DNA from: Macrostomum lignano
Lineage: Eukaryota
DNA length: 64,000 nt
Assembly: GCA_002269645.1 (NCBI GenBank)
Contig: NIVC01000006.1
Span: 372,001-436,000 of the forward strand
Direction: 5' to 3'
A model generated the notes under the pieces. That model was not told the DNA's origin, searched no databases, and saw only the letters and a program-made list of their open reading frames with translations. Below, piece by piece: positions 4,916 to 54,434 of the stretch. The first letter of the stretch is position 1, and each line of letters opens with the position of its first letter. The position numbers and the translations under genes were made by a program.

Positions 4916-5356
4916 TTATTTCCCGCCGGTGCTTCTCTCGCGAACAAAATCGAACCCACGGACAGAGGCGTCGGCCAGCTCGGCGGGGTAGCACAGCCCG
5001 GCCCCGGCCGTCAGGCCCAGCGCTCCGTAGGCCAGTCGCCGCAGGCCGCCGCCTCGATAGCCGGCCACGACGCCGCCGAGGCCGCACAGACCGACCAGAG
5101 CGGCCCTGGCAACCAGACTGGGATCGGCGCGGACTCGCTCCCAGGTCTCCCAGCTGTGCGCGGAGCCGGTGGCGGCAGCCGCCTGGCCCCGCTGCCAAGC
5201 GGCTGTGATGGCGGCCGTGTCCACGGCTGATCCCACGGCCTGCCTGGCCGGCGACACCAGCGGCTCCAGCGGCGAGGCCGGCGCCGGCTCAAGGACGTAG
5301 GCGCGGTCGGCCAGGTCGTTGCCGTAGATGTCCAGGTCGCGCAGACGGCTCACCAT
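4916..5356 (-). CDS. Apolipoprotein O family / MICOS subunit MIC26-MIC27-like, intronless, 146 aa
   Basis: ATG-initiated GC-rich ORF. LDIY...LEP N-terminal block and Gly-rich hydrophobic hairpin GLCGLGGVVAGYRGGGLRRLAYGALGLTAGAGLCYP resemble the ApoO/MIC26/27 family (recognised from memory, no search run). Confidence 0.7.
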   Translation of the reverse strand: MVSRLRDLDIYGNDLADRAYVLEPAPASPLEPLVSPARQAVGSAVDTAAITAAWQRGQAAAATGSAHSWETWERVRADPSLVARAALVGLCGLGGVVAGYRGGGLRRLAYGALGLTAGAGLCYPAELADASVRGFDFVRERSTGGK

Positions 5357-6427: not shown

Positions 6428-7498
6428 AGCTCTCTAATCTCCCTCAACTCTCTCTAATCTCCCTCAACCATCTCTAATCTCCCTCAACCCTCTCTAATCT
6501 CCCTCAACTCTCTCTAATCTCCCTCAACCCTCTCTAATCTCCCTCAACCCTCTCTAATCTCCCTCAACCCTCTCTAATCTCCCTCAACTCTCTCTAATCT
6601 CCCTCAACCCTCTCTAATCTCCCTCAACCCTCTCTAATCTCCCTCAACCCTCTCTAATCTCCCTCAACCTCTCTAATCTCCCTCTACTCTCTCAATCTCC
6701 CTCAGCTCTTTAATCTCCTTCAACCCTCTCTAATCTCAACTCAACCCTCTCTAATCTCTTTCAAGCATCTCTAATCTCCCTCAACCCTCTCTAATCTCCC
6801 TCAACCCTCTCTAATCTCCCTCAACCCTCTCTAATCTCCCTCTACTCTCTCAATCTCCCTCAGCTCTTTAATCTCCTTCAACCCTCTCTAATCTCCCTCA
6901 ACCCTCTCTAATCTCCCTCAACCCTCTCTAATCTCCCTCTACTCTCTCAATCTCCCTCAGCTCTTTAATCTCCTTCAACCCTCTCTAATCTCTTTCAAGC
7001 ATCTCTAATCTCCCTCAACCCTCTCTAATCTCCCTCAACCATCTCTAATCTCCCTCAACCCTCTCTAATCTCCCTCAACCCTCTCTAATCTCCCTCTACT
7101 CTCTCAATCTCCCTCAGCTCTTTAATCTCCTTCAACCCTCTCTAATCTCAACTCAACCCTCTCTAATCTCTTTCAAGCATCTCTAATCTCCCTCAACCCT
7201 CTCTAATCTCCCTCAACCCTCTCTAATCTCCCTCAACCCTCTCTAATCTCCCTCAACCCTCTCTAATCTCCCTCTACTCTCTCAATCTCCCTCAGCTCTT
7301 TAATCTCCTTCAACCCTCTCTAATCTCAACTCAACCCTCTCTAATCTCTTTCAAGCATCTCTAATCTCCGTCAACCATCTCTAATCTCCCTCAACCATCT
7401 CTAATCTCCCTCAACCATCTCTAATCTCCCTCAACCCTCTCTAATCTCCCTCAACCCTCTCTAATCTCCCTCAACCATCTCTAATCTCCCTCAACCCC
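6428..7498. repeat. Minisatellite, 20-bp unit CTCTCTAATCTCCCTCAACC, starting right at the NDH-2 stop codon
   Basis: About 50 tandem copies with recurrent variants. Confidence 0.95.
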
Positions 7499-10400
7499 CT
7501 AGAACCTAGAGGTGTCCCTGCCAAAAAGCAGCGCTTTAGTCCAGTCCACGGGCACCTGCAGCCGGAGCCGCCAGCTGCCCAGCCTAGTCAGATAGGCCGA
7601 CCGCCACAGCAGCCAAGATGTGAACCCGTGCAGTTTCACGCCGGGCGTGTCAGTCAGAGCTTTAAACTCGCCAATATAAGCCAGCATTCCGCGGCCAGCA
7701 AAACGAAACGGTTCATCTTGGAGTTGAGTGCCGCTGTTGGATTCTGACAGAGGCCCAGTTCGATCCTGATTGAGCCGATTAGCCAGGTAGCGCCCCTGCC
7801 TCTCAGCCACCTGAGCCGTGCACGGCAGCGGACCGTCAACTATGGAAGCGCAATCTCCAATAGCAAATGATCGGCCAGTTTTATCAGCCAGAACTCTCAG
7901 CTGCGGGTCTGTTAACAGCTGACCGCTGGGACTCTTAGGCGCGTCTAGATCGTGTATGAAAGGCCGCGGCGCCAAGCCAGTGCTCCACACAACCAGGCCT
8001 GCAGGCAAGCGACTGCCGTCTCTGAGCGGGTGGGAGCTATCCGAGTGTAAATTATGGGGCTGTAGTTATAGACCTCTAGCGTATGAATTGCTACGAATCA
8101 CGTGACTTCACCGAAGGCTCTGGTCACGTGCCTGTAGGAAATCAAGTGATTTCTATAAGATTCTGCTCACGTGACTTTGAAGGAGATTGATCAAATCACT
8201 ATACAAAAATGTCATTATTATTAGCGATGGTCACGTGACTAAGAATCATTTGACTTTGAAACAATGGCTAGTTTGAAACAACTGTGAAAAACACGTGACT
8301 CTTCATAGACATTCTAAGAAAGCTGATTACATTACTGTATGAAATTCAAATGATTTCTATAGTCCGGAAAAAATCTCTTACTTACAGGTTGCTCACGCTA
8401 TAGAAATCTTGTGACTTTTAAGAAAAAAGGTCACGTGACACAATAAAATTACGTCACCTCAAACAAGCTGGTCAACTCCCTAAAAATCTGGCGATATCTA
8501 GTCTGACCATGTGTCTTTCAAGTTCTAAGACAAATGGTCACGTGACTTCTAATGTTAAGACGAATGGTCACGTGACTTTTATGGATTAAGACGAATGGTC
8601 ACGTGACTTTTATGATTAAAGACGAATGGTCACGTGACTTTTATGGATTAAGACGAATGGTCACGTGACTTTTATGATTAAAGACGAATGGTCACGTGAC
8701 TTTTATGGATTAAGACGAATGGTCACGTGACTTTTATGATCTAAGACGAATGGTCACGTGACTTTTAAGGCCTAAGACGAATGGTCACGTGACTTTTAAG
8801 GCCTAAGAAGAATGGTCTCGTGACTTTTATGATCTAAGACAAATGGTCACGTGACTGTAAAAATTCCGTCTGCAGAGCTAAACAAACCTGAGCGCCGCTC
8901 CCTGGGCGTCAACCGACGCAACAGTTCCCTGTCGCAAGTCGAAATTTTTTCTAGCTCGAATCTTTTTCTCCGCATAATTACGCAACGAGGCGTCGAACGA
9001 GGCAAGAATCTGGGCCGATTCGACCAGGGTGACGCGGACATCGGCGGCTTTGTGCCGGTACAGCCTGGCCAAATCTGTCCGAGCAAAGTCGTACAATTCA
9101 GCGCCGAATTCCACCCCGGTCGGTCCGCCGCCCACAATGACCATACATGCGCAACCTCCAAATTTCGGTCGGCCATGCGACTTAGTTTTAACAAAAATGC
9201 GACGTAGTTTTTGGCCAAAAATGCGACTTACATGTAAAAAAACCCGAAAGCAAAATTAACGCAACTTTGGGTAAACGGCAGGAGTAACTATGACTGTCTT
9301 ATAAAGCCAAAATGCCTCGTCAGCTACTTAGTACTACTACTCTGTGTTTTTTCGGGTTGGCATTTTTGCGACTTCCTTGGTTGGCCGCCAAATCGGTCGG
9401 CCGGATCGGCCGACTCGGCCGACTGTTGCGCATGTATGACAATGACAGTGTGCAGCAGGCGTGCCCGCTCGTCTGGACTGACCCAGGCCTGCTGGGCCAG
9501 CTCAGTGTTCTCAATCAGGCGCTCACGGATTTGCCTGGCGTCGCTCACCTCCTGCCGGAGGTTTTTTCATATTTCATATTAGCTATGGGCATTTCTCTGA
9601 GGCCGATTTATAGTCAGCAATAGAATCCTACAATCCCAAACTAGGGATTGCAGGACACCTTTAAGGATCCCAGACTAGGGATTGCAAGACATCTTTAAGA
9701 AACCCAGACAAGAGATTGCAGGACATCTTTAAGAATCCCAAACAAGGGATTGCCAGACACCTTTAACAATCCTAAACTAGGGATTGCCGGACACCTTTAA
9801 CAATCCCAAACTAGGGATTACCGGACACCTTTAACAATCCCAAACTAGGGATTACTGGACACCTTTAACAATTTTAAACTAGGGACTACCGGACATTTTT
9901 AAGAATCCAAAACTAGGGACTACCGGACATTTTCAAGAATCCAAAACTAGGGACTACCGGACATTTTCAAGAATCCAAAACTAGGGACTACCGGACATTT
10001 TCAAGAATCCAAAACTAGGGACTACCGGACATTTTCAAGAATCCAAAACTAGGGACTACCGGAAATTTTCAAGAATCCAAAACTAGGGACTACCGGACAT
10101 TTTCAAGAATCCAAAACTAGGGACTACCGGAAATTTTCAAGAATCCAAAACTAGGGACTACCGGACATTTTCAAGAATCCAAAACTAGGGACTACCGGAC
10201 ATCTTTAAGAATCTCAAACTAGGGATTACCGGACATCTTTAACAATCCCAAACTAGGGATTACTGGACATTTTCAAGAATCCAAAACTAGGGACTACCGG
10301 AAATTTTCAAGAATCCAAAACTAGGGACTACCGGATATTTTCAAGAATCCAAAACTAGGGACTACCGGACATCTTTAAGAATCTCAAACTAGGGATTACC

Positions 10401-11138
10401 GGACATCTTTAACAATCCCAAACTAGGGATTACTGGACATCTTTAAGAACCCAAAACTAGGGACTGCCGGACACCCTAAAAACTTCAAATTAAGGAATTA
10501 GCAGAAACCCTAATTAAGAGAATAGAAGACATTATTAAGAATCCAAAATCAAGGGATTAACAGACACCTTTAAGGATAAATTACACGGGGATAAATCCAC
10601 AGACTTTAAATATTTTATTAGGGCCTTACTCAAATCTCACCTTGAGAAAGAAGGCGTGCTCATTAACACCGGGCACGCCAAAGGTATTAGTGAGCGCACC
10701 CACCCCAATAATCAATCGATCATAGCCAATCTGATAGGATGCTCGACTTCCCAAACAGGAACGGCAGGTGACTTCGCGCAGATTAAAGTCCACCTCAGTG
10801 GCCTCGGCCAGATGGAAATGGTCCGACTGTCTGAAGCCATACTCGCGCACCGGCTCAATAATGGAACGAAACTCAAGCGTACCAACAGTTGTTGAGCACA
10901 GCAGCGGGGTGAATAGAAAGTGATTCCTAGGCGACACGACAATGACGTCAAATTTTGATTTGTCAACATTGCGCAGAGCCGAGTAGCTGCCCCAGCCCGT
11001 GCCCAGAATTACAAGACGCTGCCGGCTGCCATTTTGATAATCTGCTGATGCAGAATGGCGGCAGCGGATGCTGCATTTTTGAAGCCTAAAGCTGTTACAA
11101 CAGCGACGGCTTAGAGGAAGGAGCAGCAATGATGCCAA
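7499..11138 (-). CDS. Type II (alternative, rotenone-insensitive) mitochondrial NADH:ubiquinone oxidoreductase, Ndi1/Nde-like; exon 2 interrupted by a MITE; no genomic ATG
   Basis: Exons 11138-10641, 9551-8888 (MITE plus one TSD = 305 bp to be removed) and 8021-7499, all GT-AG, give 1380 nt = 460 codons in frame. Motifs: RLVILGTGWG, SPRNHFLFTPLL, YDRLIIGVGA, VIVGGGPTGVEFGAEL, VVWSTG, FAIGDC, TAQVAERQGRYLA, WLLWRSAYL...DW...LFGRD. Arg/Ser/Leu-rich presequence-like N-terminus. Confidence 0.9.
8520..8860. repeat. Intronic minisatellite, ~31-bp unit with palindromic core GTCACGTGAC
   Basis: About 11 units of AAGACGAATGGTCACGTGACTTTTATGGATT, in the NDH-2 intron 8022-8887. Confidence 0.9.
9142..9438. 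mobile_element. 297-bp MITE with 14-bp TIRs and 8-bp TSD (hAT- or P-superfamily type) inserted in NDH-2 exon 2
   Basis: TIR CATACATGCGCAAC at 9142-9155 and its exact reverse complement at 9425-9438. TSD ACAATGAC at 9134-9141 and 9439-9446. Subterminal GTCGGCC repeats. Confidence 0.93.
9630..10480. repeat. Intronic minisatellite, 34-bp unit AAGAATCCAAAACTAGGGACTACCGGACATTTTC
   Basis: About 25 tandem copies in NDH-2 intron 9552-10640. Confidence 0.95.
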
Positions 11139-13905
11139 CTGAAAGCAGAAATTTGCATTGTACTCAGCTATAAAATGCTTTTAGAGTGTGCTTGGTGAGA
11201 GTAGTATCAGACAGTAGTATGAGAGTTATAAGATGGGAGCATCTATTAATTTACTAAGCCTAGGCCTTGTACATTGTATAGTCTTTTGTATAGCAGCAAC
11301 ACCACGAATGCATTTTTCTTATTTTAAAAATGAAATACCTTTTCAGGTTAAAAATAGGCACTCTGTCTTAACTAAATAAAATGTCTTATTTAGAATTCAG
11401 TTAGCTCAAGGGTGTTAGCAGCTCAACTGATTTTCTACAAACTTGCAAAAAAGCAAAAAAGGTGATGGAAAATAAATTTGGTAAGATTTTCTTAAAGGTA
11501 CTCTCATGCAATAGATTTGAAATAATTTGTCATTATTTGCATGGTACCTTGTAAATAACAAATGCCTTTATTAAAATGCTTCATTCTTTCTTAAATTTCA
11601 TTTTGCATTTCTGTCCAATTTCTTAAAGCCAATAGTCATTGTTAAGAACTTTTACTCAGACACAATGAGAAGTCAAAATGGCCATTATTAACACCATTCA
11701 GCATCTCCACTTCTAGATTTTTCTAATTGATAAGAGCAGGCATATTGCTAAGATTTTATTAAACTGGAGTCTAAATTTGCCTCCTTCATTGTCATAGAAT
11801 TTGTCCATGGTGAATCTCTATTGCCAGAATGGTTAGCACCTGTTGAAAAGTTAGCAAAAGCTAGGCCTTACTTGTAATACTTGCAATATTTGCTTGTTTT
11901 GTTTGGATTATATTTGTCTCTCACTATTAGTAGGGACTGGTAAGATATAGAAATTTGACCAAAATCAAAACACTTAAAAATGTTTTTTCTAATATAAAAA
12001 ACAACCTAGTAGATAACTAAAAAAATAAATTAAGCAACATAGAAAGAGATACTCTAGAAGAAAAATAATTTTAGTAGTATTATTGAACTATAATACTACT
12101 AAAATACTTATTGTATTATTTTAGAAAAGTAGTATTATTGAAAATGTCAATTTTAATACATAAAACAGAATTGAAACAAATTTTCTTTTTAGTTAGGAAT
12201 CTATTTCCTAGGTAAGTAGGTATCTAGGTAGGTGCAAAAGCAGAAATTAGAGAGAAGTAAGCAAATGAGAGAGTACTCAGTGTGAAAGCTTGGAGGAAAA
12301 GATTGAAGGAAATGAAAGGGAAGAGGAATCAAATCTTGAGCACAAAGGAGAGAGAGAAAATGAGGAGGAGGTTATATGCGAGTGAATGAATCAAAGGAAA
12401 AGATATTGCATGCCAAGCAATGTGAGGATTATGTTATCCTAACCAACAAGAACAAACCAAGGTAGATCCAACCAAGAACAAATGAGGTAGATCTTGGTGT
12501 TGTGCATTGGAGCTCAGTCTATAGCTTTAGTGCATTATTGTTTTTCTGTCTATGTTGTATACTATGTGACTTAAGCTTTGCTCAACTTTCATTCTGTTAT
12601 TGTTTAGTAAGTCTATGGCTACTCTTTCTTTCTCAGAGCTCCCCTCTGGGTTTTAGCCCTTCTTCCTCTCAAGACTCTACCTAGAGCTATGCACTCAAGA
12701 TTCCTAATTCTACCATCAAATACAAACAATAACTTTGCACTACTTGTCACCTTAATCTTGACACACATCACCTGGCCTAGGTGCCAACTTCCCAGCTATC
12801 TTGGATAAGTTATTAAGAGGCTAGCATGAGCAAATTAAGCAACTGGTGAACATCCTAAAAGGGTCATTTGGTTTACATGGCCTACCTGCACACAGATTGG
12901 CCTACATCATGCTGGTATACACATGCCAGGAAGGAATTTTTGTACAAAATCCTAGATGCATTCTGTGCGCACAGACAAAAACTTGTGCACTTCTTGCAAA
13001 CTTGCAAAAGGCTTACGTGTGCAGGTTTTTTACACTATTAAAACTTGCAACTACAAAAAAATGTGCATGTATGTAATTAAACATTGAAGTATTCAAAGAT
13101 TGTTAAAAATATTTTAATGTTTTAAACTCTGTGGGCTTTTTACTAATTTTAAGATGCCTTTTTAAATCTTATACTTTCTTTGTTATATGTCATGCAACTT
13201 TAAATTAAAATTAACACCTTGTACATTCTCTTTTCAAATCAGCCAAATTACACAAAATGGCATCAAAAGTCAAAACAGTTTAAATGTATAAAGTTTAAAA
13301 ACTTTTGTGTTTTAAAAGTAATAAACAGTTTTTTAAGATTATTGTAAATATATCACTAGGTCAAAATAACTGTCTTTTTCATTCATTCATATTAAAAAGA
13401 TAAATCAGAAATGTTTAGCATTACTATTAGAGCACCTATTACTAGTAGTTAAATTATTTTTTTTAAACTTTTATATAAAAATATTCAATTAATTTGTCAA
13501 TTCATTAATTCAAGAAAGAGTACATTTAATTTTTGTGCTATTTCTTAATTATTGATCAAATCAACTAGTGGCTCTAATTTTATAAAAAAATTTATTAGTC
13601 TTAATGCTATGACTATAACTATCTATGAACTATTCAAAAATGTCTTTGTGGTGGTTATGGAAATTTTACTTATTACTTATTAATTTCTTTAATCTCTAAT
13701 AAATATTTAAAGCAATGAATGATATTATTGATATTATAACTTTATAAGGATGTATACAGATAAGGATAAGGATATTTCTCTGATTTCAAAATGCCTATGC
13801 CTGTTGCCTTAGTTTTTGCAGCATCTAGCTTTATTACTTTGGCAATATTATCATATATAATGTCTGATAGTATTAACTAGTGGTGTAGATAAAGAAAATA
13901 AAGCT

Positions 13906-18869: not shown

Positions 18870-20252
18870 CACATACCAATAGGGGCCTGCTAACTAAAGT
18901 TGTCTAAACTTTAATTCAAAATTAGTAGCAGGCCCTAGCACTTCGCTAGGTCAAGATATTAGTTTGCAATCAATCAGAAAAAAATTAATAATTCGTCTAG
19001 ATTCGAACACGAGGGCTGCGCACACGCCTAAGGCGAATTTTACCTATCCATCCAGGCCCGACTCGGATTATGAACTTAGAATTTAGAAACAGACCTTGAA
19101 TTGAATTTTGCTTTATAAGAAGTAACGTTTTTAAACAAAATTTACTAGCTTTAAAACAACTTAACGAGCTGCGCTACTTATGTTTTCAAAATAATTAGCT
19201 TTGGCTGCCTTTGCTTTTATTCCTTGATACGGCTGAACCTTAAAGCATTTCCTTGCTTCCCACATGTTTAAAATATAGATTTCTATAGATTGTCGACAGT
19301 ATAGTTTGGAATATAAAGTTTAGTCTAGCAATCTAGTGCCCCCTGCCCCTTTCGGGGCGCCCAATAAGCAAGGAGCAAAAGTATTCATGTAAATCTTTTA
19401 AAAAGCACATTTTCTTGAGAACAGAATTTTTCTGTTTTATAGATCACCTTATTCGAGTAAATTTGTCATGGACTAAGATGTTTGCTATGAATCTCTTTTT
19501 TCTAAAAGTAACAAAAGTGCACCACAAAATAAAGCCTTCACAAAGATAATAGGCATTCCCCTAAGTCAAAAGCATTTAAAGTAGCTGAAGTAACAAAATA
19601 TTTTTATTTTATTAAAAAATTTTTTATTATTTTACAAAATCATTTGCTGTGGAGCCTGTCTTTAATAATAATATTTTTAAATATCTTTTATAATATGTAA
19701 AGTAGCTGAAGTAATAAAATCTTTAATTCTTACCATGCTCTCTAGAAGCTTACTTTCTAGAAGATAGTCTAGTCTTATTTGGTGGTGGCTAGGCCTAATT
19801 CTAGGCAGCTTTCCTATAACTTTATTAGGCCTACTCTTAATTTAAGCCTCCACCATCCTAACCACAATGTGTAATGTATATATGGTGTCAAAAAGTTTTT
19901 TGAGTCCTTAACCTAGTGAGTTAAAAGCTTTCCTTGTATTAAAAATAAAAACTTTTATCTTAAATTAGCCCCTTTATCGTAGGGGGCCATAGCCCAGCAG
20001 TCTAGTGCAGGCTCTGGTATGCGTTGCATGCTTGTGCTTATTGAAAAATGGAAGTACATCATTTCTCTTCCCTTTTCCTACCTTCACTCTCTTTCCCGAT
20101 TGATTTATCATTCACTTATTCACTTATATACAGTACTAAACTGCACTGTACCCTGTACCCTGTAGGCTATACTGTACTGTATGTCTGGCAAACTAACTTG
20201 TATATATACACTCATGCACTCATATATATATGAATATATGATTCGCATACAG

Positions 20253-20500
20253 TTCCTCTCGATTGCGACTTAGTTCCTCCCGATTGCGACTTAGTTCCTC
20301 TCGATTGCGACTTAGTTCCTCCCGATTGCGACTTAGTTCCTCCCAATTGTGACTTAGTTTTCACTTTGTATATGACTTTTCTTGCCTTTTTCTCTTTTCT
20401 TTTATTTCTCTTTCTTTCTCCTCTTCCCCTCTCTCTCTCTTTCTTCTCCCTCCTTTCTTTTCCTTTTCTCTTCTCCTTTTTTTCTTCTCCCAATTTTTCG
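20253..20500. repeat. 21-bp tandem repeat (5 copies) followed by a CT-rich low-complexity tract
   Basis: GTTCCTCCCGATTGCGACTTA units, then polypyrimidine. Confidence 0.85.
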
Positions 20501-20579
20501 TTTTTGTGTTTTCAATTTTGCGACTTACCTTGGCCAGAGGCCATTTCACCTGTCCAGTTCGGACAGGTCGGACAGGTGT

Positions 20580-20700
20580 TGGGCATGTATGCCTATGTGA
20601 GTGTGTGCCTGCATACTTATCCGCGTGCTTGTATGCCTGCTCAGGGGAGTCGGTGGAATGGGCAGTAATGCCTCTCGCCAGTTGTGTGCCTATGTCACTT
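20580..20700. repeat. Dispersed repeat family (SINE-like core); related copies at ~490-560, ~43485-43550 and ~57427-57500
   Basis: Shared core CTCAGGGGAGTCGG(T/C)GGAATGGGCAGTAATGCC or its reverse complement seen in several places; the copy at ~490-560 is more diverged. Confidence 0.6.
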
Positions 20701-22367: not shown

Positions 22368-25300
22368 ATCCCCGCTCTCCAATTTCCCGCAGTCTGGGCC
22401 ATCGCAGCCTGAGCGCGCCCAGTCTGGACCATCGGCATCGCCAGCATTTATTCAATGGCGATGGCGGTGGACTTCAGCCTGATCAGCAGCAGCCACCGAT
22501 GGACGCGGCCACTGGCGACTGCGGCCTGCTGTGCAGCCTCCTGCTGCCCGCCTCGCTAGCCGGCGGCAACACTTCGTGCGGCTCGCCCTGCCAGGCTGCC
22601 GCCAATTCGTCCGCTGCCCCCGCCTCTCTGGGCTCGTCCAGGAGGGTGGAGTTTCTCTATCGGGCCAGGTGCGACGATGCCCAGGCTGTGCTGCGGTTTC
22701 TGTCCAGAGGCGGCGGGCCCGTGGATCTGGTGCAGGTAGGCTGGGCGATGGTTTGGCTCTGTGTAGTGTCTGTCAAGTGTCTGTAGTGTCTGTTAAGTTT
22801 CTTACGTGTCTGTGACTTGTCTGTAGGTTCTCTGCTAATTGTCTGTAGTGTCTGTCAAGTGTCTGTAGTGTCTGTCAATTGTCTGTAGTGTCTTTCAATT
22901 CTCTGTAGTGTCTAAATGTGTCCGTAGTGTCTGCCTGTCATCCCCTGTCAAGTGTCTGTTTTTTCTGTCTTTAGTGTCTCTGCCTTCCTGTTTGTCCGCC
23001 TGTGTCTGTGTGTATGTGTCTGTCTCATTCCCTGTGTTTTTATCTGCTTTTTATCAGGTGTTATTTTTTACCGGGTTCATGCTAGTTCTTTTTTGAATTA
23101 AGCGCTTGTACTTTTGCACTTGGTCACGTGACTTCTGTCCCGTCTGTCGAACTGCAGGGCGGCAGCAGGCGCACCGCTCTGTGCTACGCTGCAGCCAATG
23201 GCAACAGCCGCCTGGCCGAGGAGCTCCTGGCGCTCGGCGCAGCGGTGGACGGCCTCGGCTACGAGGTGCCGCTGATCCACGCCTGCGAGCGCGGCCACCT
23301 GGACACTGTCCGGCTCCTGCTGGCCTCTGGCGCGTCGCCCGCTTGTCGAGACGCTCGCGGCTCGACGCCTCTAATTAAAGCGGTCAGTCAGGGACATCTG
23401 GAGGTTGTCCGGTTGCTATTGGATACGGCTGCGGAGTCAGCCGGTGCCTCTGTAGACGCGGTTAGCACTGAGCCCTGCTTCATCTGTCTGGAAGGTGAGG
23501 ATGCCAGCTTAACGTTGGATTTTTTGTATAGAATTGAAAAGTAAATGAAATGCATCGCCAAAGTGAACAAAGCATTTCAGCCCACCCCATAATTCATCAC
23601 TCCATTCAATAATTATTCCGCCTAATAATCATCATCCTATTCAATAATCATCATCTCACCTGAAAATCAACATCCGACTCAATAATCATCATCTCACCTG
23701 AAAATCATCATCTTCCTTGTTAACCATTATCCTACTCAAAAAATATAATCTTACTTGAAAGTTATCGTCCTACACTCCTACTCAATAATCATCTCATCTG
23801 ATAATCATCATCCAACTCAATAAAAATCATCTTTCTTGATAACTATTATCCTACTGAATAATCATCATCCTACTCAATAATCATCATCTCACCTGAAAAT
23901 CATCATCCTACTCAATAATCATCTCATCTGATAATCATCACCCAACTCAATAAAAATCATCTTTCTTGATAACTATTATCCTACTGAATAATCATCATCT
24001 CACCTGAAAATCATCATCCTACTGAATAATCATCATCTCACCTGAAAATCATCATCTCACCTGAAAATCATCATCCTACTCAATAATCATCTCATCTGAT
24101 AATCATCATCCAACTCAATAAAAATCTTCTTTCTTGATAACTATTATCCTACTGAATAATCATCATCTCACCTGAAAATCATCATCCCACTCAATAATCA
24201 TCATCTCACCTGAAAATCATCATCCTACTGAATAATAATCATCTCACCTGAAAATCATCATCCTACTCAATAATCATCATCTCACCTGAAAATCATCATC
24301 CCACTCAATAATCATCATCTCACCTGAAAATCATCATCCTACTGAATAATCATCATCTCACCTGAAAATCATCATCCCACTCAATAATCATCATCTCACC
24401 TGAAAATCATCATCCTACTGAATAATCATCATCTCACCTGAAAATCATCATCCCACTCAATAATAATCATCTCACCTGAAAATCATCATCCTACTGAATA
24501 ATCATCATCTCACCTGAAAATCATCATCCCACTCAATAATCATCATCTCACCTGAAAATCATCATCCTACTGAATAATCATCATCTCACCTGAAAATCAT
24601 CATCCTACTCAATAATAATCATCTCACCTGAAAATCATCATCCCACTCAATAATCATCATCTCACCTGAAAATCATCATCCTACTGAATAATAATCATCT
24701 CACCTGAAAATCATCATCCTACTCAATAATCATCATCTCACCTGAAAATCATCATCCTACTCAATAATCATCATCTCACCTGAAAATCATCATCCCACTC
24801 AATAATCATCATCTCACCTGAAAATCATCATCCTACTGAATAATAATCATCTCACCTGAAAATCATCATCCTACTCAATAATCATCATCTCACCTGAAAA
24901 TCATCATCCCACTCAATAATCATCATCTCACCTGAAAATCATCATCCTACTGAATAATCATCATCTCACCTGAAAATCATCATCCCACTCAATAATCATC
25001 ATCTCACCTGAAAATCATCATCCTACTGAATAATCATCATCTCACCTGAAAATCATCATCCCACTCAATAATCATCATCTCACCTGAAAATCATCATCCT
25101 ACTGAATAATCATCATCTCACCTGAAAATCATCATCCCACTCAATAATCATCATCTCACCTGAAAATCATCATCCTACTGAATAATCATCATCTCACCTG
25201 AAAATCATCATCCCACTCAATAATCATCATCTCACCTGAAAATCATCATCCTACTGAATAATCATCATCTCACCTGAAAATCATCATCCCACTCAATAAT

Positions 25301-27311
25301 CATCATCTCACCTGAAAATCATCATCCCACTCAATAATCATCATCTCACCTGAAAATCATCATCTCACCTGAAAATCATCATCTCACCTGAAAATCATCA
25401 TCTCACCTGAAAATCATCATCTCAACTGATACTCGTAACCATCATCCCATTACGATGATAAATGATTATTCATATAATCATCGATAGTCATTATCCTACT
25501 CAATAATCTCTTCCCATACCGACATATACCGATAATCACCATCCCACACCCGGCCTCCCAGAGCAATCGGACGGTTCGAGTTTTGCGCCCGACTGCGGCG
25601 GCCTCAGCGCTCTGATGCGCGCCACCCACGCCCTTCGAGTTGACGTCGCCCGCCTGCTGCTGGACTCCGGCGGAGCCAGCGTGGACCTCGCCAACAGCCG
25701 GGGCAACACGGCGCTCCACTCTTTGGCCCTCACCTGTCGGCTACCCGCCGCGCCCGTGTCTCACCTGGTGCATCATCCGCCGCTGCACTGGGCCGCCACA
25801 GGACGACTTCTGCTTAGCCGGGCTTGCCGGGTGAATCCCAGGAATCGTTGCGGAGAGACTCCGCTAGATCGGCTGGTCGCCTGCGCGCCCGCCACGCTGG
25901 AGTTAGCGCCGTTCAAAGTGAGCTTGACAACTGCATAGCAACGGGCTGTTGTTTACCTAAGCTCTGAGTTAATCTAGTAGCTTGACAACTGCATAGCAAC
26001 GGGCTGTTGTTTACCTAAGCTCTGGGTTAATCTAGTAGCTTGACAACTGCATAGCAACGGGCTGTTGTTTACCTAAGCTCTGGGTTAATCTAGTAGCTTG
26101 ACAACTGCATAGCAACGGTTTGATGGCTAATTGTTAACCTAATCTCCGGGGTTAATCTAGTAGCTTGACAACCGCATAGCAACGGTTTGATGGCTAATTG
26201 TTAACCTAATCTCTGGGGTTAATCTAGTAGCTTGACAACCGCATAGCAACGGTTTGATGGCTAATTGTTAACCTAATCTCCGGGGTTAATCTAGTAGCTT
26301 GACAACTGCATAGCAACGGGCTGTCGGAGCTCCAAGTTAATCTAGTAGCTCGACAACCGCATAGCAACGGTTTGTTGTTAACCTAAGCTCCGGGGTTAAT
26401 CTAGTAGCTTGACAACTGCATAGCAACGGTTTGATGGCTAATTGTTAACCTAATCTCCGGGGTTAATCTAGTAGCTTGACAACTGCATAGCAACGGTTTG
26501 ATGGCTAATTGTTAACCTAATCTCCGGGGTTAATCTAGTAGCTTGACAACTGCATAGCAACGGTTTGATGGCTAATTGTTAACCTAATCTCCGGGGTTAA
26601 TCTAGTAGCTTGACAACTGCATAGCAACGGTTTGATGGCTAATTGTTAACCTAAGCTCCGGGGTTAATCTAGTAGCTTGACAACCGCATAGCAACGGGCT
26701 GTCGGAGCTCCAAGTTAATCTAGTAGCTTGACAACCGCATAGCAACGGTTTGATTGCCGTTGTTAACCTAAGCTCCGGGTAAATCTAGTAGCTTGACAAC
26801 GGCATAGCAACCAGCCCTAATTTCTGTTTCCTATTCGCCCCCAACACAGGCTCAAGCGGTAACAGCGTGGTGCGAAGTGGTCCGCCTACTGCTTGTGTAC
26901 GGAGCCGACCTGTCCAACAAGGTGACATTCAATCACAGAGAGACCGCCCTGGACCGCCTAGTGAGAAAGCTGCTTGCCCTGATGGAGTGCAGCGCCAGCT
27001 CGCAGGAGTTCTTGGCTTTGGCCAGGCTGCTGCTCACTCTGTCCCGGTTGAGCACCCGGCGGCGCCGGCTGGCCTCGGCGGCGGCTTACCTGGCGAGCCA
27101 CCAGCTGGCCGCCAGCGAGCCGCGTTTGGGCCGGTTTTTCCTGCGCCTGCGCGACGACCTCTCCGGCCCGCTGAGCTTGAAGGCGGCCTCCGCACTGAGG
27201 CTGCGTCTGGCTTGCGGAGATCCGCTGGTTGCTAGGGCTCGCCGATTGCCGTTGCCAAGGACGCTAATTCACTACGTAGTATTCGGTGTTGCCGAATCTG
27301 CGGCTAGTTAA
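21688..27311 (+). CDS. Ankyrin repeat and SOCS box protein (ASB-like), 5 exons, ~530 aa
   Basis: Exons 21688-21782, 22393-22735, 23158-23494, 25562-25917 and 26850-27311 join with consistent phases (2,0,1,0) to 1593 nt. Ankyrin repeats (TALCYAAANGN, PLIHACERGH, TPLIKAVSQGH, GNTALH, GETPL). C-terminal SOCS box PLSLKAASALRLR...LPLPRTLIHYV. Confidence 0.88.
22213..22367. repeat. (TCTG)n microsatellite in ASB intron 1
   Basis: Direct. Confidence 0.95.
23620..25430. repeat. Intronic minisatellite, ~38-bp unit CTCACCTGAAAATCATCATCCTACT(C/G)AATAATCATCAT
   Basis: About 45 copies filling ASB intron 3. Confidence 0.95.
25920..26812. repeat. Intronic minisatellite, 58-67-bp unit (GCTTGACAACTGCATAGCAACGG...TTAATCTAGTA)
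   Basis: About 14 copies starting immediately after the donor of ASB intron 4. Confidence 0.93.
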
Positions 27312-32053: not shown

Positions 32054-33095
32054 CAATTAGTTAATTAGTTAGTTAGTTAGTTAGTCAGTGAGTTAGTTAG
32101 TTAGTTAGTTAGTTAGTCAGTGAGTTAGTTAGTTAGTTAGTCAGTGAGTTAGTCAGTTAGTCAGCTAGTAAGTCAGTCAGTTAGTTGGTTATTTAGTCAG
32201 TCAGTTAGTCAGTTAGTGGGTTAGTCAGTTAGTGAATTGGATAATATTTCGACACTCAAATCGCAGCCAGCATTGAGTCAAGTAGTTTTGTCAATTCTAC
32301 CACTGATCCCTAAGCAACAACATGTCACACCGCAGTGCCACATGCCGTCCCTACCACCCCCCGCCCCCACCTCAGCCCGCCATGCGCAAGCGAGTGCTAA
32401 TCTACGGCAGTCTAATCCTTGGCCAAGGACTGCTAGGCTGGTACATGGTCCGCAGCGGGCTGAGCAAGGACACCCTGACTCAGGACGTGCCCCGGGTCAG
32501 CCAGTACAGACTGGCCGCTCACCTGGGCTCGGCCCTGCTGCTATTCTCCCTGTTCACCTGGTCGGCCCTCACCCACCTGCTGCCGTTCACTCAATTCGGC
32601 GCCGCCGTGGCTCTGCGCGGCCGCCTGGCCGCCGCTGCCCACCTGCTGACGTCGGCCGCCTTCGCCACGGCCATTTCCGGCGCGTTCGTTGCCGGTATCG
32701 ACGCCGGCTTGGTGTACAACAGCTGGCCGAAGATGGCCGACCGCTGGGTGCCAACCGACTATTGGGCTCTGCAGCCGGCTTGGAGGAATCTGTTTGAGAA
32801 CGCCAGCGCTACTCAGTTCAATCACCGACTGCTGGGGCACAGCACCGCCTGTGCGGTTGCCGCCGTTTGGCTGTGGGCTGTGGCGGCCAAAACTCGCAGA
32901 GCCGCTCTGCCGCCTCGAACTAGGCTGGCGCTGAACAGCCTACTGGCAGTAGTGTGCACCCAGGCCGGGCTGGGCATCGCCACTCTGCTCACCTACGTGC
33001 CCATCGCTTTGGCTGCCTGTCACCAGACTGGCAGTCTGGCTTTGCTGGGCACCGCGACTTGGCTCATGCACGAGCTGAGGCGCGTGCCCAAGTGA
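30661..33095 (+). CDS. COX15: Heme A synthase COX15, 3 exons; no genomic ATG
   Basis: Exons 30661-31035, 31506-31724 and 32376-33095, all phase 0 and GT-AG. Motifs [94 protein letters not shown]. Confidence 0.95.
31790..32235. repeat. (TTAG)n microsatellite in COX15 intron 2
   Basis: Direct. Confidence 0.95.
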
Positions 33096-36034: not shown

Positions 36035-39000
36035 TCTGCCGAAGTTGCTTCGTCCGCCGCAGCGGACCGGCCTCCAATTGAGGTGGCCGTCCTTCTGTCC
36101 GACGAGAAGGAGCGCAAGCTGCGCCTCTTCGAACGGTGCCGTCAGAATCCGCCGTCTGGGGTTCGATTCCACCGACTAGATTTAGACGAACTGCTGCAGT
36201 CGGGCAGTCGCTATAGAGTTGTGCTGCACAAGATTCACTCGGAATTGACCTCGAATAAACCCGAATCGATCGATCGTGTCCGGCGGTTTAAAGCTTGGAT
36301 AGAGGCAAGAGGCTCCGAGTTGGTTCTGTTGGACCCTCTGCGCGGCCTCGAGTCCATGCTGCTGTACCGCTTTGCCCAGTGCCAAGCTATGTCCAGGTGT
36401 GCTGGGGCAAAATAAATTTGCCTATTGTGTTCGATTGATTAATCCGCATTTGGTTAGAATATGTTAAGTAGCCAAATCACATGCATACACATCTGTCCAC
36501 GTACTTAAATGCATTCCCGCCCAAGCAGATGTACATTCGGATATCCTCCCAGTCATATGTACATCTTCGCCCATGCAAATGTAACAGTAAACTGCCACGC
36601 ATATGTGATGTACATTATACGCATATCCGCCCAAGCATACGTACGCGCAAATGTACACACCCGCCCACGCACATGTACACATACCCGCCCACGAACATGT
36701 ACACATACCTGCCCACGCACATGTACACCTGCCCGCCCACGCACATGTACACATACCTGCCCACGCACATGTACACACACCCAGGCACTTGTACCGGTAC
36801 ACCTGCCCGCCAAGGTACATGTACACAGACACACACAGGCACTTGTACCGGTACACCTGCCCGCCCACGCACGTACACAAATCCTTCCACGCCGTGAAAT
36901 TTACAGATGCGTCGCCGCATGCCCCGAGCCGCTGCGCCAGCGGGTGTTCGTGCCCCGCTACGCCCTCGTCCAGAACCCTGGCGACCCCGTCGCCGACTCC
37001 AACGGCGCGCTCCGCTTCCCGCTGCTGTGCAAGCCGCATCTGGCCTCCGGAGCGGAGGCGCACAGTATGTCGCTGGTGTTCAATGCCGGACAGCTGGCCG
37101 ACCTGCGGCCGCCCTTGGTGGCTCAGGAGTTTGTCAATCATGGTGCTAGGATTATCAAGGTAAGCATTGATAATTTCCTTTATTTCGGTCCGATAATCCA
37201 GACTCATTTCCTGATTCTTTACTACCAGATAATCCTCATCTTCACTACCAGATAATCCGCCCCTTCACTACCAAATAATCCACCCCTTCACTACCAAATA
37301 ATCCACCCCTTCACTACCAGATAATCCACCCCTTCACTACCAGATAATCCACACCTTCACTACCAGATAATCTGCCCCTTCACTACCAGATAATCTGCCC
37401 CTTCACTACCAGATAATCTGCCCCTTCACTACCAGATAATCTGCCCCTTCACTGCCAGATAATCCACACCTTCACTACCAGATAATCTGCCCCTTCACTA
37501 CCAGATAATCTGCCCCTTCACTACCAGATAATCTGCCCCTTCACTACCAGATAATCTGCCCCTTCACTACCAGATAATCTGCCCCTTCACTACCAGATAA
37601 TCTGCCCCTTCACTACCAGATAATCTGCCCCTTCACTACCAGATAATCTGCCCCTTCACTACCAGATAATCTGCCCCTTCACTACCAGATAATCTGCCCC
37701 TTCACTACCAGATAATCTGCCCCTTCACTGCCAGATAATCTGCCCCTTCACTATCCGATAATCTGCCCCTTCACTACCAGATAATCTGCCCCTTCACTAC
37801 CAGATAATCCGCCCCTTCACTACCAGATAATCTGCCCCTTCACTACCAGATAATCTGCCCCTTCACTACCAGATAATCTGCCCCTTCACTACCAGATAAT
37901 CTGCCCCTTCACTACCAGATAATCTGCCCCTTCACTGCCAGATAATCCACACCTTCACTACCAGATAATCTGCCCCTTCACTACCAGATAATCTGCCCCT
38001 TCACTACCAGATAATCTGCCCCTTCACTGCCAGATAATCCACACCTTCACTACCAGATAATCCACACCTTCACTACCAGATAATCTTCATCTTCACTACC
38101 AGATAATCCGCCCCTTTACTGCCAAATAATCCGCCCCTTCACTACCAGATAATCCGCCCCTTCACTACCAGATGATCCACACCTTCACTACCAGATAATC
38201 TGCCCCTTCACTATCCGATAATCCGCCCCTTCACTATCCGATAATCCGCCCCTTCACTATCCGATAATCCGCCCCTTCACTATCCGATAATCCGCCCCTT
38301 CACTATCCGATAATCCGCCCCTTCACTATCCGATAATCCGCTCATTCACTACCAGATAATCCGCCCCTTCACTGCCAGATAATCCGTCCCTTCACTGCCA
38401 GATAATCCGCCCCTTCACTGCCAGATAATCTGCCCCTTCACTATCCGATAATCTCCCCTTTCACTACCAGATAATCCGCCCCTTCACTACCAGATAATCT
38501 GCCCCTTCACTACCAGATAATCTGCCCCTTCACTACCAGATAATCTGCCCCTTCACTACCAGATAATCTGCCCCTTCACTACCAGATAATCTGCCCCTTC
38601 ACTGCCAGATAATCCACACCTTCACTACCAGATAATCTGCCCCTTCACTACCAGATAATCTGCCCCTTCACTACCAGATAATCTGCCCCTTCACTGCCAG
38701 ATAATCCACACCTTCACTACCAGATAATCCACACCTTCACTACCAGATAATCTTCACCTTCACTACCAGATAATCTGCCCCTTCACTACCAGATAATCTG
38801 CCCCTTCACTACCAGATAATCTGCCCCTTCACTACCAGATAATCCGCCCCTTCACTACCAGATGATCCACACCTTCACTACCAGATAATCTGCCCCTTCA
38901 CTATCCGATAATCCGCCCCTTCACTATCCGATAATCCGCCCCTTCACTATCCGATAATCCGCCCCTTCACTATCCGATAATCCGCCCCTTCACTATCCGA

Positions 39001-40754: not shown

Positions 40755-40839
40755 TCAGGACATTGGGCCCCGTCGGGTGAAGGACTGTCGGACTGAGTCG
40801 ATTTGAATAGGAAATCTTTTTATTCCCTGATTTATCCCC

Positions 40840-54019: not shown

Positions 54020-54434
54020 AGCTCTGCTCTGGCGCTCGGTTCTTTCCAAAGAGAAACTTACAATAGCAGAGAAGCTCACTGGCAAGCCGTTGTCAAGATT
54101 TCTTTTTGCCGCTCTTAACTTCTTTCGCTCGCCACTTCACTTTATTGCACTTCTCTCTAGGAAGCCCCACGAGCCACACACGCTTGTGCCGCTTCTCTGT
54201 TTGCTCGCTGCAGGGGGGGGGGGTCGGTGGAGGCGCTTGATTGGCTCGCAGCAACAGCTGCATAATCATGCGAGGGGGGGCCGTGGGACGATCCCCAACA
54301 CCTCAGAAAGTGGAGAGGCCAGAAGCGCGGCTGGCGGTGCGAATAAATCGCGCCAAGAGGCGATCAGAAAAACTGAAACAAAGCCGTTTGGCCCGCCTTC
54401 ACTGCTTGGCCAGGGGAGACAGAGTAAGACAGAG

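What the first reader, a model, noticed from the sequence alone, without database searches (positions are those of the whole stretch)
7499..11138. An animal gene for a type II (alternative) NADH dehydrogenase
Seen: a complete ~460-aa Ndi1/Nde-like sequence with two dinucleotide-binding motifs, no EF-hand insert, a presequence-like N-terminus and spliceosomal introns, embedded among animal genes. Known: NDH-2 bypasses complex I without pumping protons; it is typical of fungi, plants, protists and bacteria, absent from vertebrates and insects, and patchily reported in invertebrates. Inference: this animal has, or recently had, a branched respiratory chain.
Basis: partly seen in the sequence, partly recalled or inferred. 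Interest (0 to 1): 0.7.

Follow-up and report, generated by a model that had tools for sequence, protein, structure and literature searches.

The report
Flatworm alternative NADH dehydrogenase, transposon-interrupted copy
This is a genuine animal (flatworm, Macrostomum lignano) gene for the single-subunit "alternative" NADH dehydrogenase that bypasses complex I, a family already known in many marine invertebrates, but this copy is split by a small transposon and has no start codon of its own, while a near-identical second copy elsewhere in the genome is intact.

Summary
The sequence is real and lies at the stated coordinates, on the minus strand. The window matches Macrostomum lignano contig NIVC01000006.1 with no mismatches. 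The conceptual 459-aa product is a canonical NDH-2: Pyr_redox_2 plus NDH2_C domains, yeast Ndi1 at E 5e-63 against FSP1/AIFM2 at 5e-5. It is 55-63% identical to NDH-2 of echinoderms, molluscs, annelids, nematodes, tardigrades, spiders, cnidarians, tunicates and Trichoplax. In a tree it falls inside Metazoa, with a choanoflagellate as nearest outgroup.

- The middle "intron" (9438..9142) is a 297-bp non-autonomous DNA transposon with 14-bp terminal inverted repeats and an 8-bp target duplication. It sits just before the NADH-binding GGGPTG motif. The paralogous locus has the empty site, and the GenBank model of this locus reads into the element and stops.
- Exon 1 has no ATG. It begins at a TTTCAG acceptor in phase 0, where the flatworm spliced leader (which ends in AUG) would supply Met. 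The paralog carries ATG at exactly that trinucleotide.

Verdict: an ordinary member of the known metazoan NDH-2 family. This copy is probably a very young null, and the animal keeps an intact copy. Interest is low to moderate.

The parts
11139..11150 (-). Splice acceptor ctgctttCAG immediately 5' of exon 1 (CAG = 11141..11139). Proposed spliced-leader trans-splice acceptor, phase 0. The paralog L001 has ATG in place of CAG.
   Evidence: It matches the M. lignano trans-acceptor motif [T/C]TNCAG (PMC8629364).
10641..11138 (-). Exon 1 (166 codons): presequence-like N-terminus LASLLLLPLSRRCCNSFRLQKCSIRCRHSAS and the FAD-binding Rossmann motif GTGWGS (11003..10986). No in-frame ATG. Donor is AAG|GTGAGA.
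9552..10640 (-). Intron 1 (GT..AG), mostly a 34-bp x 24.8 tandem array at 9632..10473.
   Evidence: Also present in L001.
9439..9551 (-). Exon 2, 5' part (EVSDARQIRE...LLHTVIV). The last 8 nt, 9446..9439 (GTCATTGT), are the left copy of the target-site duplication.
9142..9438 (-). 297-bp non-autonomous DNA transposon (MITE). It has perfect 14-bp terminal inverted repeats CATACATGCGCAAC and internal AAGTCGCA-type repeats. Read-through translation stops at TAG 9326..9324.
   Evidence: Empty site in L001 at 11661-11668. GenBank model PAA94571.1 ends inside it.
9134..9141 (-). Right copy of the 8-bp target-site duplication GTCATTGT.
8888..9133 (-). Exon 2, 3' part: NADH-binding Rossmann motif GGGPTG (9132..9115) and TLVES with the acidic residue at the end of beta-2. 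Donor is AG|GTTTGT, phase 2.
8022..8887 (-). Intron 2 (GT..AG), containing a 31-bp x 10.7 tandem array at 8526..8856.
7499..8021 (-). Exon 3: second half of the FAD domain, TAQVAERQ quinone-site region (7819..7796), NDH2_C membrane-anchor domain, stop TAG 7501..7499.
6430..7497 (.). 20-bp x 54 tandem array starting 2 nt after the stop codon (3' UTR or flank). A homologous array follows the gene in L001.

Best explanation
Window 11138..7499 (minus strand) is one of at least two near-identical copies of the nuclear gene for the mitochondrial type II NADH:ubiquinone oxidoreductase (NDH-2; the 'alternative NADH dehydrogenase' or NDX of animals) of the neopolyploid flatworm Macrostomum lignano.

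The enzyme would be a single FAD-containing polypeptide bound to the inner membrane through its C-terminal domain. It passes electrons from NADH to ubiquinone without pumping protons and so bypasses complex I. This is inferred from homology to Ndi1.

The gene descends vertically within animals. It is inside the metazoan NDH-2 clade, with a choanoflagellate as nearest outgroup.

In this copy a 297-bp MITE has inserted, with an 8-bp target duplication, between the codons for ...LLHTVIV and GGGPTG. As encoded, the mRNA would yield a product of about 241 residues that lacks the NADH-binding domain and the membrane anchor. This copy is therefore most likely a very recent null. There is no other decay: 137 of 141 near-invariant metazoan positions are kept, and the repeats of the element are still perfect. 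The function would be carried by the uninterrupted paralog on contig NIVC01001740.1.

Neither an ATG nor an upstream exon is visible for this copy. The initiator Met is most likely supplied by the 3'-terminal AUG of the M. lignano spliced leader, trans-spliced at the phase-0 acceptor TTTCAG|TTG, giving MLASLLLLPLSRR....

Shown: identity, clade, insertion and empty site, absence of an ATG. Inferred: loss of function of this copy, use of the SL AUG, enzymatic role and mitochondrial location.
For: Identity:
- Pfam Pyr_redox_2 1e-37 and NDH2_C 1.7e-15.
- PDB: yeast Ndi1 E 5e-63 across residues 33-455, Plasmodium NDH2 8e-55, FSP1 only 5e-5.

Organism:
- P0001 is an M. lignano protein, 99% identical.
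- The window equals NIVC01000006.1 with 0 mismatches.

Clade:
- 120 of the 120 best hits that carry a name are animals, at 54-64% identity.
- The best non-animal cluster is the choanoflagellate Salpingoeca urceolata, 48% identity.
- NJ tree: Metazoa 85.5% bootstrap, Metazoa plus choanoflagellate 96.5%.

Transposon:
- Terminal inverted repeats found at 9142-9155 and 9425-9438; 4 matches in the window against 0.5 expected.
- Window 9439 aligns to L001 11668 and window 9141 aligns to L001 11661. The 8-nt overlap is the target duplication, so L001 is an empty site.
- A related degenerate element lies at about 20591.
- The GenBank model for this locus reads ...LLHTVIVIHAQQSAES...SSSTK and stops inside the element.

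Selection: dN/dS 0.15 between the copies, with 13 synonymous and 6 non-synonymous changes. The non-synonymous changes are all at variable sites.

Start codon:
- No ATG in exon 1, and an in-frame stop 14 codons upstream.
- The acceptor fits [T/C]TNCAG and the 35-nt SL ends in ATG (PMC8629364).
- The flatworm SL AUG is documented as an initiator (PMC9851317 citing Cheng et al. 2006).
- L001 has ATG at exactly this trinucleotide. It is the only adjacent double difference in about 380 nt of roughly 99%-identical upstream sequence.
Against: - I had no RNA reads. SL use at this acceptor and retention of the element in mRNA are not directly shown.
- The GenBank model is a genome-guided assembly. Reads from the paralog or from other copies of the element could have contributed to it.
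- An older UniProt model (P0123) splices most of the element out (ACT|GTCATT ... CTAAG|TCG), leaving 13 extra residues. A partly functional product therefore cannot be excluded.
- CAG in place of ATG could instead be loss of the start codon.
- The ATG in L001 could be an artefact of polishing the assembly with RNA-seq (PMC5730564).
- The two copies could be divergent haplotypes rather than homeologs.
Confidence: 0.75

Rival explanations
1. The 297-bp element behaves as a new intron (intronisation of a MITE). Cryptic sites remove most of it, and this copy still makes a working NDH-2 with a short insertion before the NADH-binding strand.
For: Enumeration of in-frame, stop-free GT..AG pairs finds donor 9446 (ACT|GTCATT) or 9440 with acceptor 9181 (CTAAG|TCG). 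These give +13 or +15 residues and keep VIVGGGPTG intact. UniProt model A0A1I8I8Y7 (P0123) uses exactly this splice. The rest of the copy shows no decay.
Against: Neither site fits the M. lignano consensus of GT[G/A]AG for donors and CAG for acceptors (PMC8629364). The acceptor has no pyrimidine tract. The transcript-based GenBank model does not splice here and terminates in the element. No splice restores the original sequence. The insertion abuts the first beta-strand of the NADH Rossmann fold.
Confidence: 0.15
2. The missing ATG is a second disabling lesion. The ancestral genomic start codon ATG, as in L001, mutated to CAG in this copy, so the copy is a pseudogene on two counts and the spliced leader plays no part.
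For: L001 has ATG at the homologous trinucleotide. Other animal NDH-2 genes encode their own Met.
Against: UniProt model P0001 has the L001-type residue at all six differing positions, yet reads ...FCFQLASLL, i.e. CAG. CAG therefore occurs with both protein types and is more parsimoniously ancestral. The copies have been under purifying selection since they split (dN/dS 0.15). The change yields a perfect TTTCAG acceptor in phase 0 with the SL AUG, which is unlikely for a random two-base change.
Confidence: 0.2
3. It is an AIFM2/FSP1-type or AIF-type oxidoreductase rather than a respiratory NDH-2.
For: It shares the Pyr_redox_2 fold, and FSP1 chains appear weakly in the PDB search (E about 5e-5).
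Against: Ndi1 matches end to end at 217 bits, against about 26 bits over residues 192-383 for FSP1. The NDH2_C domain is present. All close relatives are annotated as NDH-2, NDA or NDE.
Confidence: 0.01
4. The gene is not the animal's own. It would be a contaminant contig or a recent horizontal transfer from a fungus, protist or bacterium.
For: NDH-2 is best known from non-animals. Its intron positions are not shared with Capitella or Nematostella.
Against: It lies in a 1.11-Mb M. lignano contig, with a syntenic second copy on a 243-kb contig. It is flanked by ApoO-like, COX15 and SLC22-like genes and has GT..AG introns. Its nearest relatives are animals at 54-64% identity, and the choanoflagellate is the sister.
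Confidence: 0.01

Closest known systems
Ciona intestinalis NDX (alternative NADH dehydrogenase; P0112) and the wider metazoan NDH-2 clade described by Matus-Ortega et al. 2011 and McDonald & Gospodaryov 2019 (cited in PMC7056681)
   Same: Same domain layout (Pyr_redox_2 plus NDH2_C, no EF-hand), similar length (about 430-490 aa), and 56-58% identity to Ciona with up to about 65% to molluscs. Same clade in the tree. 137 of 141 near-invariant metazoan positions are kept.
   Different: The host is a flatworm. I found no paper in the searchable library that mentions NDH-2 in flatworms. This copy is interrupted by a MITE and lacks an encoded ATG. It has a small lineage-specific insertion around residues 378-386. 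Its intron positions are not shared with Capitella or Nematostella.
Saccharomyces cerevisiae Ndi1 (PDB 4G6G/4G73/5YJW), internal rotenone-insensitive NADH:ubiquinone oxidoreductase
   Same: Full-length alignment at E 5e-63. Both GxGxxG motifs, the acidic residue ending beta-2 of the NADH domain (TLVES, aligned with Ndi1 LVEA), the TAQVA quinone-site segment and the C-terminal amphipathic anchor all align.
   Different: About 35-40% identity only. Ndi1 carries several longer loops. The second Gln of Ndi1's AQVAHQ is displaced by one residue here and in all animal sequences (AQVAERQ).
Plant NDA1/NDA2 and fungal or protist NDE-type external enzymes; NDB-type enzymes with an EF-hand
   Same: Same family. 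NCBI names many animal orthologues 'internal alternative NAD(P)H-ubiquinone oxidoreductase A1-like'.
   Different: 41-47% identity, outside the animal-plus-choanoflagellate clade. There is no EF-hand insert, so no NDB-type calcium control. Which side of the membrane it faces is unknown.
AIFM2 / FSP1
   Same: Same FAD/NAD(P)H two-Rossmann superfamily.
   Different: Only a partial match of about 26 bits. FSP1 has no NDH2_C domain. This sequence is not a member.
Flatworm genes that take their start codon from the spliced leader (Cheng et al. 2006, as summarised in PMC9851317)
   Same: A phase-0 acceptor directly followed by the coding sequence, no genomic ATG, and a spliced leader ending in AUG.
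   Different: Not demonstrated here with reads. What is unusual is that a paralog carries a genomic ATG at the very same three nucleotides.

Membership tests
Type II NADH:quinone oxidoreductase (NDH-2) | Two-Rossmann FAD/NAD(P)H flavoprotein fold (Pyr_redox_2) with two GxGxxG motifs | tested here: met
   Pyr_redox_2 E 1.1e-37 over residues 41-362. GTGWGS at residues 46-51 and GGGPTG at 205-210.
Type II NADH:quinone oxidoreductase (NDH-2) | C-terminal membrane-anchoring domain (Pfam NDH2_C, PF22366) | tested here: met
   NDH2_C E 1.7e-15, 57.3 bits against a 27.7-bit cutoff, residues 396-455.
Type II NADH:quinone oxidoreductase (NDH-2) | Full-length similarity to biochemically and structurally characterised NDH-2, much stronger than to sister families (FSP1, SQR) | tested here: met
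   Ndi1 5e-63, PfNDH2 8e-55, bacterial NDH-2 1e-26, FSP1 5e-5, SQR 7e-5.
Type II NADH:quinone oxidoreductase (NDH-2) | Quinone-site motif AQxAxQ | tested here: inconclusive
   TAQVAERQ aligns with Ndi1 TAQVAHQE. The second Gln is shifted by one position, as in all animal orthologues.
Type II NADH:quinone oxidoreductase (NDH-2) | Acidic residue at the end of beta-2 of the nucleotide domain (NADH rather than NADPH preference; rule taken from the plant NDH-2 literature, from memory) | tested here: met
   VTLVES at residues 238-243, aligned with Ndi1 IHLVEA.
Type II NADH:quinone oxidoreductase (NDH-2) | Rotenone-insensitive, non-proton-pumping NADH:ubiquinone reductase activity in mitochondria | not testable with these tools
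   Needs respirometry or a recombinant enzyme. The only support here is a presequence-like N-terminus (6 R/K and 0 D/E in the first 33 residues).
Type II NADH:quinone oxidoreductase (NDH-2) | An uninterrupted, translatable gene at this locus | tested here: not met
   A 297-bp MITE lies in the coding exon, with a read-through stop at 9326..9324. There is no ATG. The paralog L001 meets this feature.
Metazoan NDH-2 clade (vertical descent) | Falls within animal sequences, with holozoan relatives as sister | tested here: met
   NJ tree, 39 taxa, 425 columns: Metazoa 85.5% and Metazoa plus Salpingoeca 96.5% bootstrap. The position within animals is unresolved.
NDB-type calcium-regulated external NDH-2 | EF-hand insertion | tested here: not met
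   No EF-hand family in the Pfam scan, and the length of 459 aa leaves no room for the insert.
AIFM2/FSP1 | Best similarity to FSP1, and no NDH2_C domain | tested here: not met
   About 26 bits over a partial stretch, and NDH2_C is present.
Non-autonomous class II (cut-and-paste) DNA transposon / MITE | Terminal inverted repeats, target-site duplication, no coding capacity, and an empty site in a homologous locus | tested here: met
   14/14 terminal inverted repeats, 8/8 target duplication, and 297 bp with stops in the reading frame. Empty site in L001. Superfamily unresolved: 8 bp fits hAT, P or Merlin, but the terminus CATAC does not fit the hAT YARNG rule (from memory).
SL trans-spliced flatworm mRNA using the SL AUG | Acceptor motif without an upstream cis donor, SL AUG in frame, SL-containing reads at the site | tested here: inconclusive
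   The motif TTTCAG and phase 0 are met. SL-bearing reads could not be examined.

The most novel reading that the evidence does not exclude
The two M. lignano NDH-2 copies would be a natural pair in which the initiator codon is either outsourced to the spliced leader (CAG acceptor, this window) or encoded in the genome (ATG, paralog) at exactly the same three nucleotides, giving the same protein. That would be a captured interconversion between an SL-donated and a genomic start codon. Alongside it, this would be the first NDH-2 noted in Platyhelminthes, pointing to a branched respiratory chain in a free-living, intertidal flatworm.
Probability: 0.3. Interest if true: 0.5.

Novelty: new member of a known kind. 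Interest (0 to 1): 0.3.

Why it matters
Alternative NADH dehydrogenases let mitochondria oxidise NADH when complex I is inhibited or over-reduced, for example under sulfide, hypoxia-reoxygenation or xenobiotic stress. The Ciona and yeast enzymes are being used as bypass tools in flies and mammalian cells.

Showing that M. lignano carries an intact, selectively maintained NDH-2 adds an experimentally tractable host in which the native role of the animal enzyme could be tested. M. lignano is a transgenic, RNAi-amenable, regenerating flatworm.

The finding itself is not surprising, because the family is widespread among marine invertebrates. The practical lessons are for annotation:
- One apparent intron is a transposon.
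- The GenBank models of both copies are truncated.
- Start codons in this genome can come from the spliced leader.

The CAG/ATG difference between the copies is a small but neat lead on how SL-donated start codons arise or are lost.

Tried and rejected
- Upstream cis exon. I read 3.4 kb upstream and found no GC-rich, ORF-like block or ATG...GT candidate. The public annotation shows no called gene in the 10 kb upstream. A tiny 5' exon cannot be excluded.
- Exact excision of the element by splicing. I enumerated all in-frame GT..AG pairs. None restores the native sequence.
- Intron-position conservation as evidence of vertical descent. I mapped the Capitella (6 introns) and Nematostella (2 introns) genes. 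No position is shared with M. lignano, so this is uninformative.
- SL remnants in the genome as a test of the polishing-artefact idea. The 3' 14-mer of the SL with up to 3 mismatches occurs at chance frequency in the window and in L001. One 12/14 match lies 370 nt upstream of exon 1 and was not pursued.
- Literature on NDH-2 or AOX in flatworms. Nothing relevant turned up in the open library. The two key reviews (PubMed ids 21632289 and 29421444) are not held.
- The first tree attempt, using Biopython BLOSUM distances, timed out. I replaced it with Kimura-corrected p-distances.
- Other copies of the MITE. Only one degenerate relative is in the window. The tools give no access to the rest of the M. 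lignano genome.
- I did not search for AOX in M. lignano, because that would have required a query sequence written from memory.
Full report
**What is at the coordinates**

The coding sequence is on the minus strand. Six-frame translation shows four GC-rich coding blocks between 11138 and 7499. With exact boundaries they are:
- 11138..10641
- 9551..9439
- 9133..8888
- 8021..7499, ending in stop TAG at 7501..7499

Joined, they give 1380 nt, or 459 codons, with no internal stop.

**What the protein is**

- Pfam finds Pyr_redox_2 (1.1e-37), the NDH-2-specific C-terminal domain NDH2_C (1.7e-15, well above its cutoff) and no EF-hand.
- Against all PDB chains the best match is yeast Ndi1, E 5e-63, covering residues 33-455. 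Plasmodium NDH2 follows at 8e-55, then bacterial NDH-2 at about 1e-26.
- FSP1/AIFM2 reaches only 5e-5 over a partial stretch.
- The two dinucleotide-binding motifs are GTGWGS (11003..10986) and GGGPTG (9132..9115).
- TLVES supplies the acidic residue that marks NADH-preferring enzymes. That rule is taken from memory of the plant literature.
- The TAQVA quinone-site segment aligns with Ndi1.

**Whose gene it is**

- The best database hit, at 99% identity, is a Macrostomum lignano protein.
- Members of its cluster include two GenBank proteins from assembly GCA_002269645.1.
- Fetching their loci shows that the window is the reverse complement of contig NIVC01000006.1 (1.11 Mb), with 0 mismatches over 21,114 nt.
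- Neighbouring genes are an ApoO/MIC26-like gene (4916-5356, a below-cutoff Pfam match), a COX15 fragment (32322-33095) and three MFS/SLC22-like transporter genes.
- The window is full of 20-40-bp tandem arrays, as described for this genome (PMC5730564).

The second refutation condition (a non-animal contig) is not met.

**Phylogenetic position**

- All named proteins among the 120 best hits are animal, at 54-64% identity. They include echinoderms, molluscs, a brachiopod, annelids, a nemertean, hemichordates, nematodes, tardigrades, spiders, a scorpion, cnidarians, tunicates and Trichoplax.
- In a library clustered at 50% identity the whole animal group collapses into one representative. The next full-length cluster is from the choanoflagellate Salpingoeca urceolata (48% identity, E 7e-119). 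After it come a ciliate, amoebozoans, a red alga, a jakobid and fungal NDE-type enzymes.
- A neighbour-joining tree (39 taxa, 425 columns, 200 bootstraps) gives Metazoa 85.5% and Metazoa plus choanoflagellate 96.5%. Both M. lignano copies sit inside the animals, at an unresolved position.
- Both copies keep 137 of the 141 columns that are near-invariant among the other 26 animal sequences.

This is an ordinary, vertically inherited member of the animal NDH-2 family. That family has been known since Matus-Ortega et al. 2011 (cited in PMC7056681). I found no paper in the searchable library that mentions it in flatworms, and the two key reviews are not held.

**First correction: one "intron" is a transposon**

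- The sequence between 9438 and 9142 begins CATACATGCGCAAC and ends with its exact reverse complement (4 matches in the window against 0.5 expected).
- It is flanked on both sides by GTCATTGT (9446..9439 and 9141..9134).
- Removing the 297 bp plus one copy of the 8-mer restores ...LLHTVIVGGGPTGVEF..., which is the universal NDH-2 sequence.
- The paralogous locus L001 (contig NIVC01001740.1) shows the empty site. Window 9439 aligns to L001 11668 and window 9141 aligns to L001 11661, so the flanks overlap by exactly the 8-mer. L001 reads CACACTGTCATTGTGGGCGGC.
- The element has internal AAGTCGCA-type repeats and no coding capacity. A degenerate relative with a 13/14 terminal repeat lies at about 20591.
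- It is therefore a MITE with an 8-bp target duplication. Its superfamily is unresolved.

Read straight through, translation ends at TAG 9326..9324 after 241 codons, before the NADH-binding domain. This is exactly what the transcript-based GenBank model of the locus does: PAA94571.1 ends ...LLHTVIVIHAQQSAES...SSSTK.

No GT..AG pair removes the element precisely. The only frame-preserving options that keep the Rossmann motif add 13 or 15 residues, and they use sites that fit the species' splice consensus poorly. An older UniProt model (P0123) uses one of them.

**Second correction: there is no start codon**

- Exon 1 has no in-frame ATG. The only Met of the product is residue 398, and an in-frame stop lies 14 codons upstream of exon 1.
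- Exon 1 is preceded by ctgctttCAG. This fits the M. lignano trans-splice acceptor motif [T/C]TNCAG, and the 35-nt spliced leader ends in ...TTGCATG (PMC8629364).
- The acceptor is in phase 0. The SL's AUG would therefore read ATG|TTG GCA TCA..., giving MLASLLLLPLSRRCCNSFRLQKCSIRCRHSAS. That N-terminus is presequence-like, with 6 R/K and no D/E in the first 33 residues.
- Use of the flatworm SL AUG as initiator is documented in Schistosoma (PMC9851317 citing Cheng et al. 2006).

The paralog L001 has ATG in place of CAG at exactly this trinucleotide. It is the only adjacent double difference in about 380 nt of roughly 99%-identical upstream sequence.

UniProt model P0001 has the L001-type residue at all six amino-acid differences but reads FQ (CAG) here. 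CAG therefore occurs with both protein types and is probably ancestral.

Three readings remain open:
- a real CAG-to-ATG change in one copy, which would make the SL-donated and genomic start codons interchangeable;
- an ATG-to-CAG loss in this copy;
- an artefact in L001, because the assembly was polished with RNA-seq reads as well as DNA reads (PMC5730564).

I could not discriminate between them without reads.

**State of the two copies**

- L001 encodes an uninterrupted 459-codon frame with canonical splice sites.
- The copies differ by 13 synonymous and 6 non-synonymous changes (dS 0.038, dN/dS 0.15). All six replacements are at positions that vary among animals.
- Both lineages were therefore under purifying selection for most of their separate history.
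- The insertion is very young: its terminal repeats and target duplication are still perfect.
- M. lignano is a neopolyploid, and its assembly contains several versions of most loci (PMC5730564; PMC10733133). That explains the duplicate. I cannot say whether the two are homeologs or haplotypes.

**Mechanism and verdict**

By homology to Ndi1, the intact enzyme would sit on the inner mitochondrial membrane through its C-terminal domain, oxidise NADH and reduce ubiquinone without proton pumping. That would give the worm a rotenone-insensitive bypass of complex I. This is inferred, not shown.

The copy in this window is most likely a recent null or hypomorph. The animal retains the function through the other copy.

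The finding is correct in its main claim but not rare or new in kind. The points of modest interest are the first flatworm example, the MITE mistaken for an intron, and the CAG/ATG start-codon difference.

Noticed in passing
window 11139-11141 (minus strand) vs L001 9962-9964: The trinucleotide before exon 1 is CAG (a splice acceptor) in the window copy and ATG in the paralog. It is the only adjacent double substitution in about 380 nt of roughly 99%-identical upstream sequence. Either start-codon supply has switched between the spliced leader and the genome, or it is an artefact of polishing the assembly with RNA-seq.
   Followed up: partly
window 6430-7497: A 20-bp x 54 tandem array (CTCTCTAATCTCCCTCAACC) starts 2 nt after the NDH-2 stop codon, so the 3' UTR must run into or through a minisatellite. 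A homologous array follows the paralog in L001 (13332-14357).
   Followed up: partly
window 9632-10473 and 8526-8856: Both true introns of the gene are largely tandem arrays (34-bp x 24.8 and 31-bp x 10.7). The 31-bp unit contains the palindrome GGTCACGTGACT (an E-box-like CACGTG core). The arrays are also present in the paralog, with different copy numbers.
   Followed up: no
window ~20250-20591 (minus strand): A degenerate relative of the MITE: terminal CATACATGCCCAAC (13/14), 68% identity over the first 90 nt, followed by purine-rich low complexity and five tandem AACTAAGTCGCAATCGGGAGG units. This shows that the element family is repeated in the genome.
   Followed up: partly
window 4916-5356 (minus strand): A 146-aa ApoO/MIC26-like (MICOS) ORF lies 2.1 kb downstream of NDH-2 on the same strand. 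The Pfam match is weak (24.6 bits, below the 31.4-bit curated cutoff). Two TTTTCAG acceptor-like motifs lie 25-50 nt before its ATG. It is syntenic in L001. It is possibly SL trans-spliced, and co-transcription with NDH-2 was not examined.
   Followed up: no
window 32322-33095 (+): An ORF with a strong COX15/CtaA (haem A synthase) match, E 1e-54, covering only profile positions 106-321. It is presumably one exon of a mitochondrial-function gene and is a third such gene within 30 kb, which is probably coincidence.
   Followed up: no
window 44506-46368 (-), 52292-54085 (-), 60120-61301 (+): Three long ORFs with MFS/Sugar_tr (SLC22-like transporter) domains, apparently a local gene cluster.
   Followed up: no
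window 23624-25429, 37217-40349, 40833-41798 and many others: Very dense 20-40-bp tandem arrays, for example 23-bp x 136 at 37217-40349. They account for the extreme GC skew seen in the composition profile (-0.5 to -0.65) and are typical of this genome.
   Followed up: partly
window 11505-11518 (minus strand): AAATCTATTGCATG matches the last 14 nt of the M. lignano spliced leader at 12/14, 370 nt upstream of exon 1. The paralog differs at one of these bases. The overall frequency of such matches is at chance level.
   Followed up: partly
L001 10001-12734 and window 11114-9324: The GenBank models of both NDH-2 copies are partial and wrong at their 3' ends. PAA64560.1 runs into intron 2 (...AALRHVTRAFGEVT) and PAA94571.1 runs into the MITE. 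Neither model includes the last exon, which carries the NDH2_C domain.
   Followed up: yes
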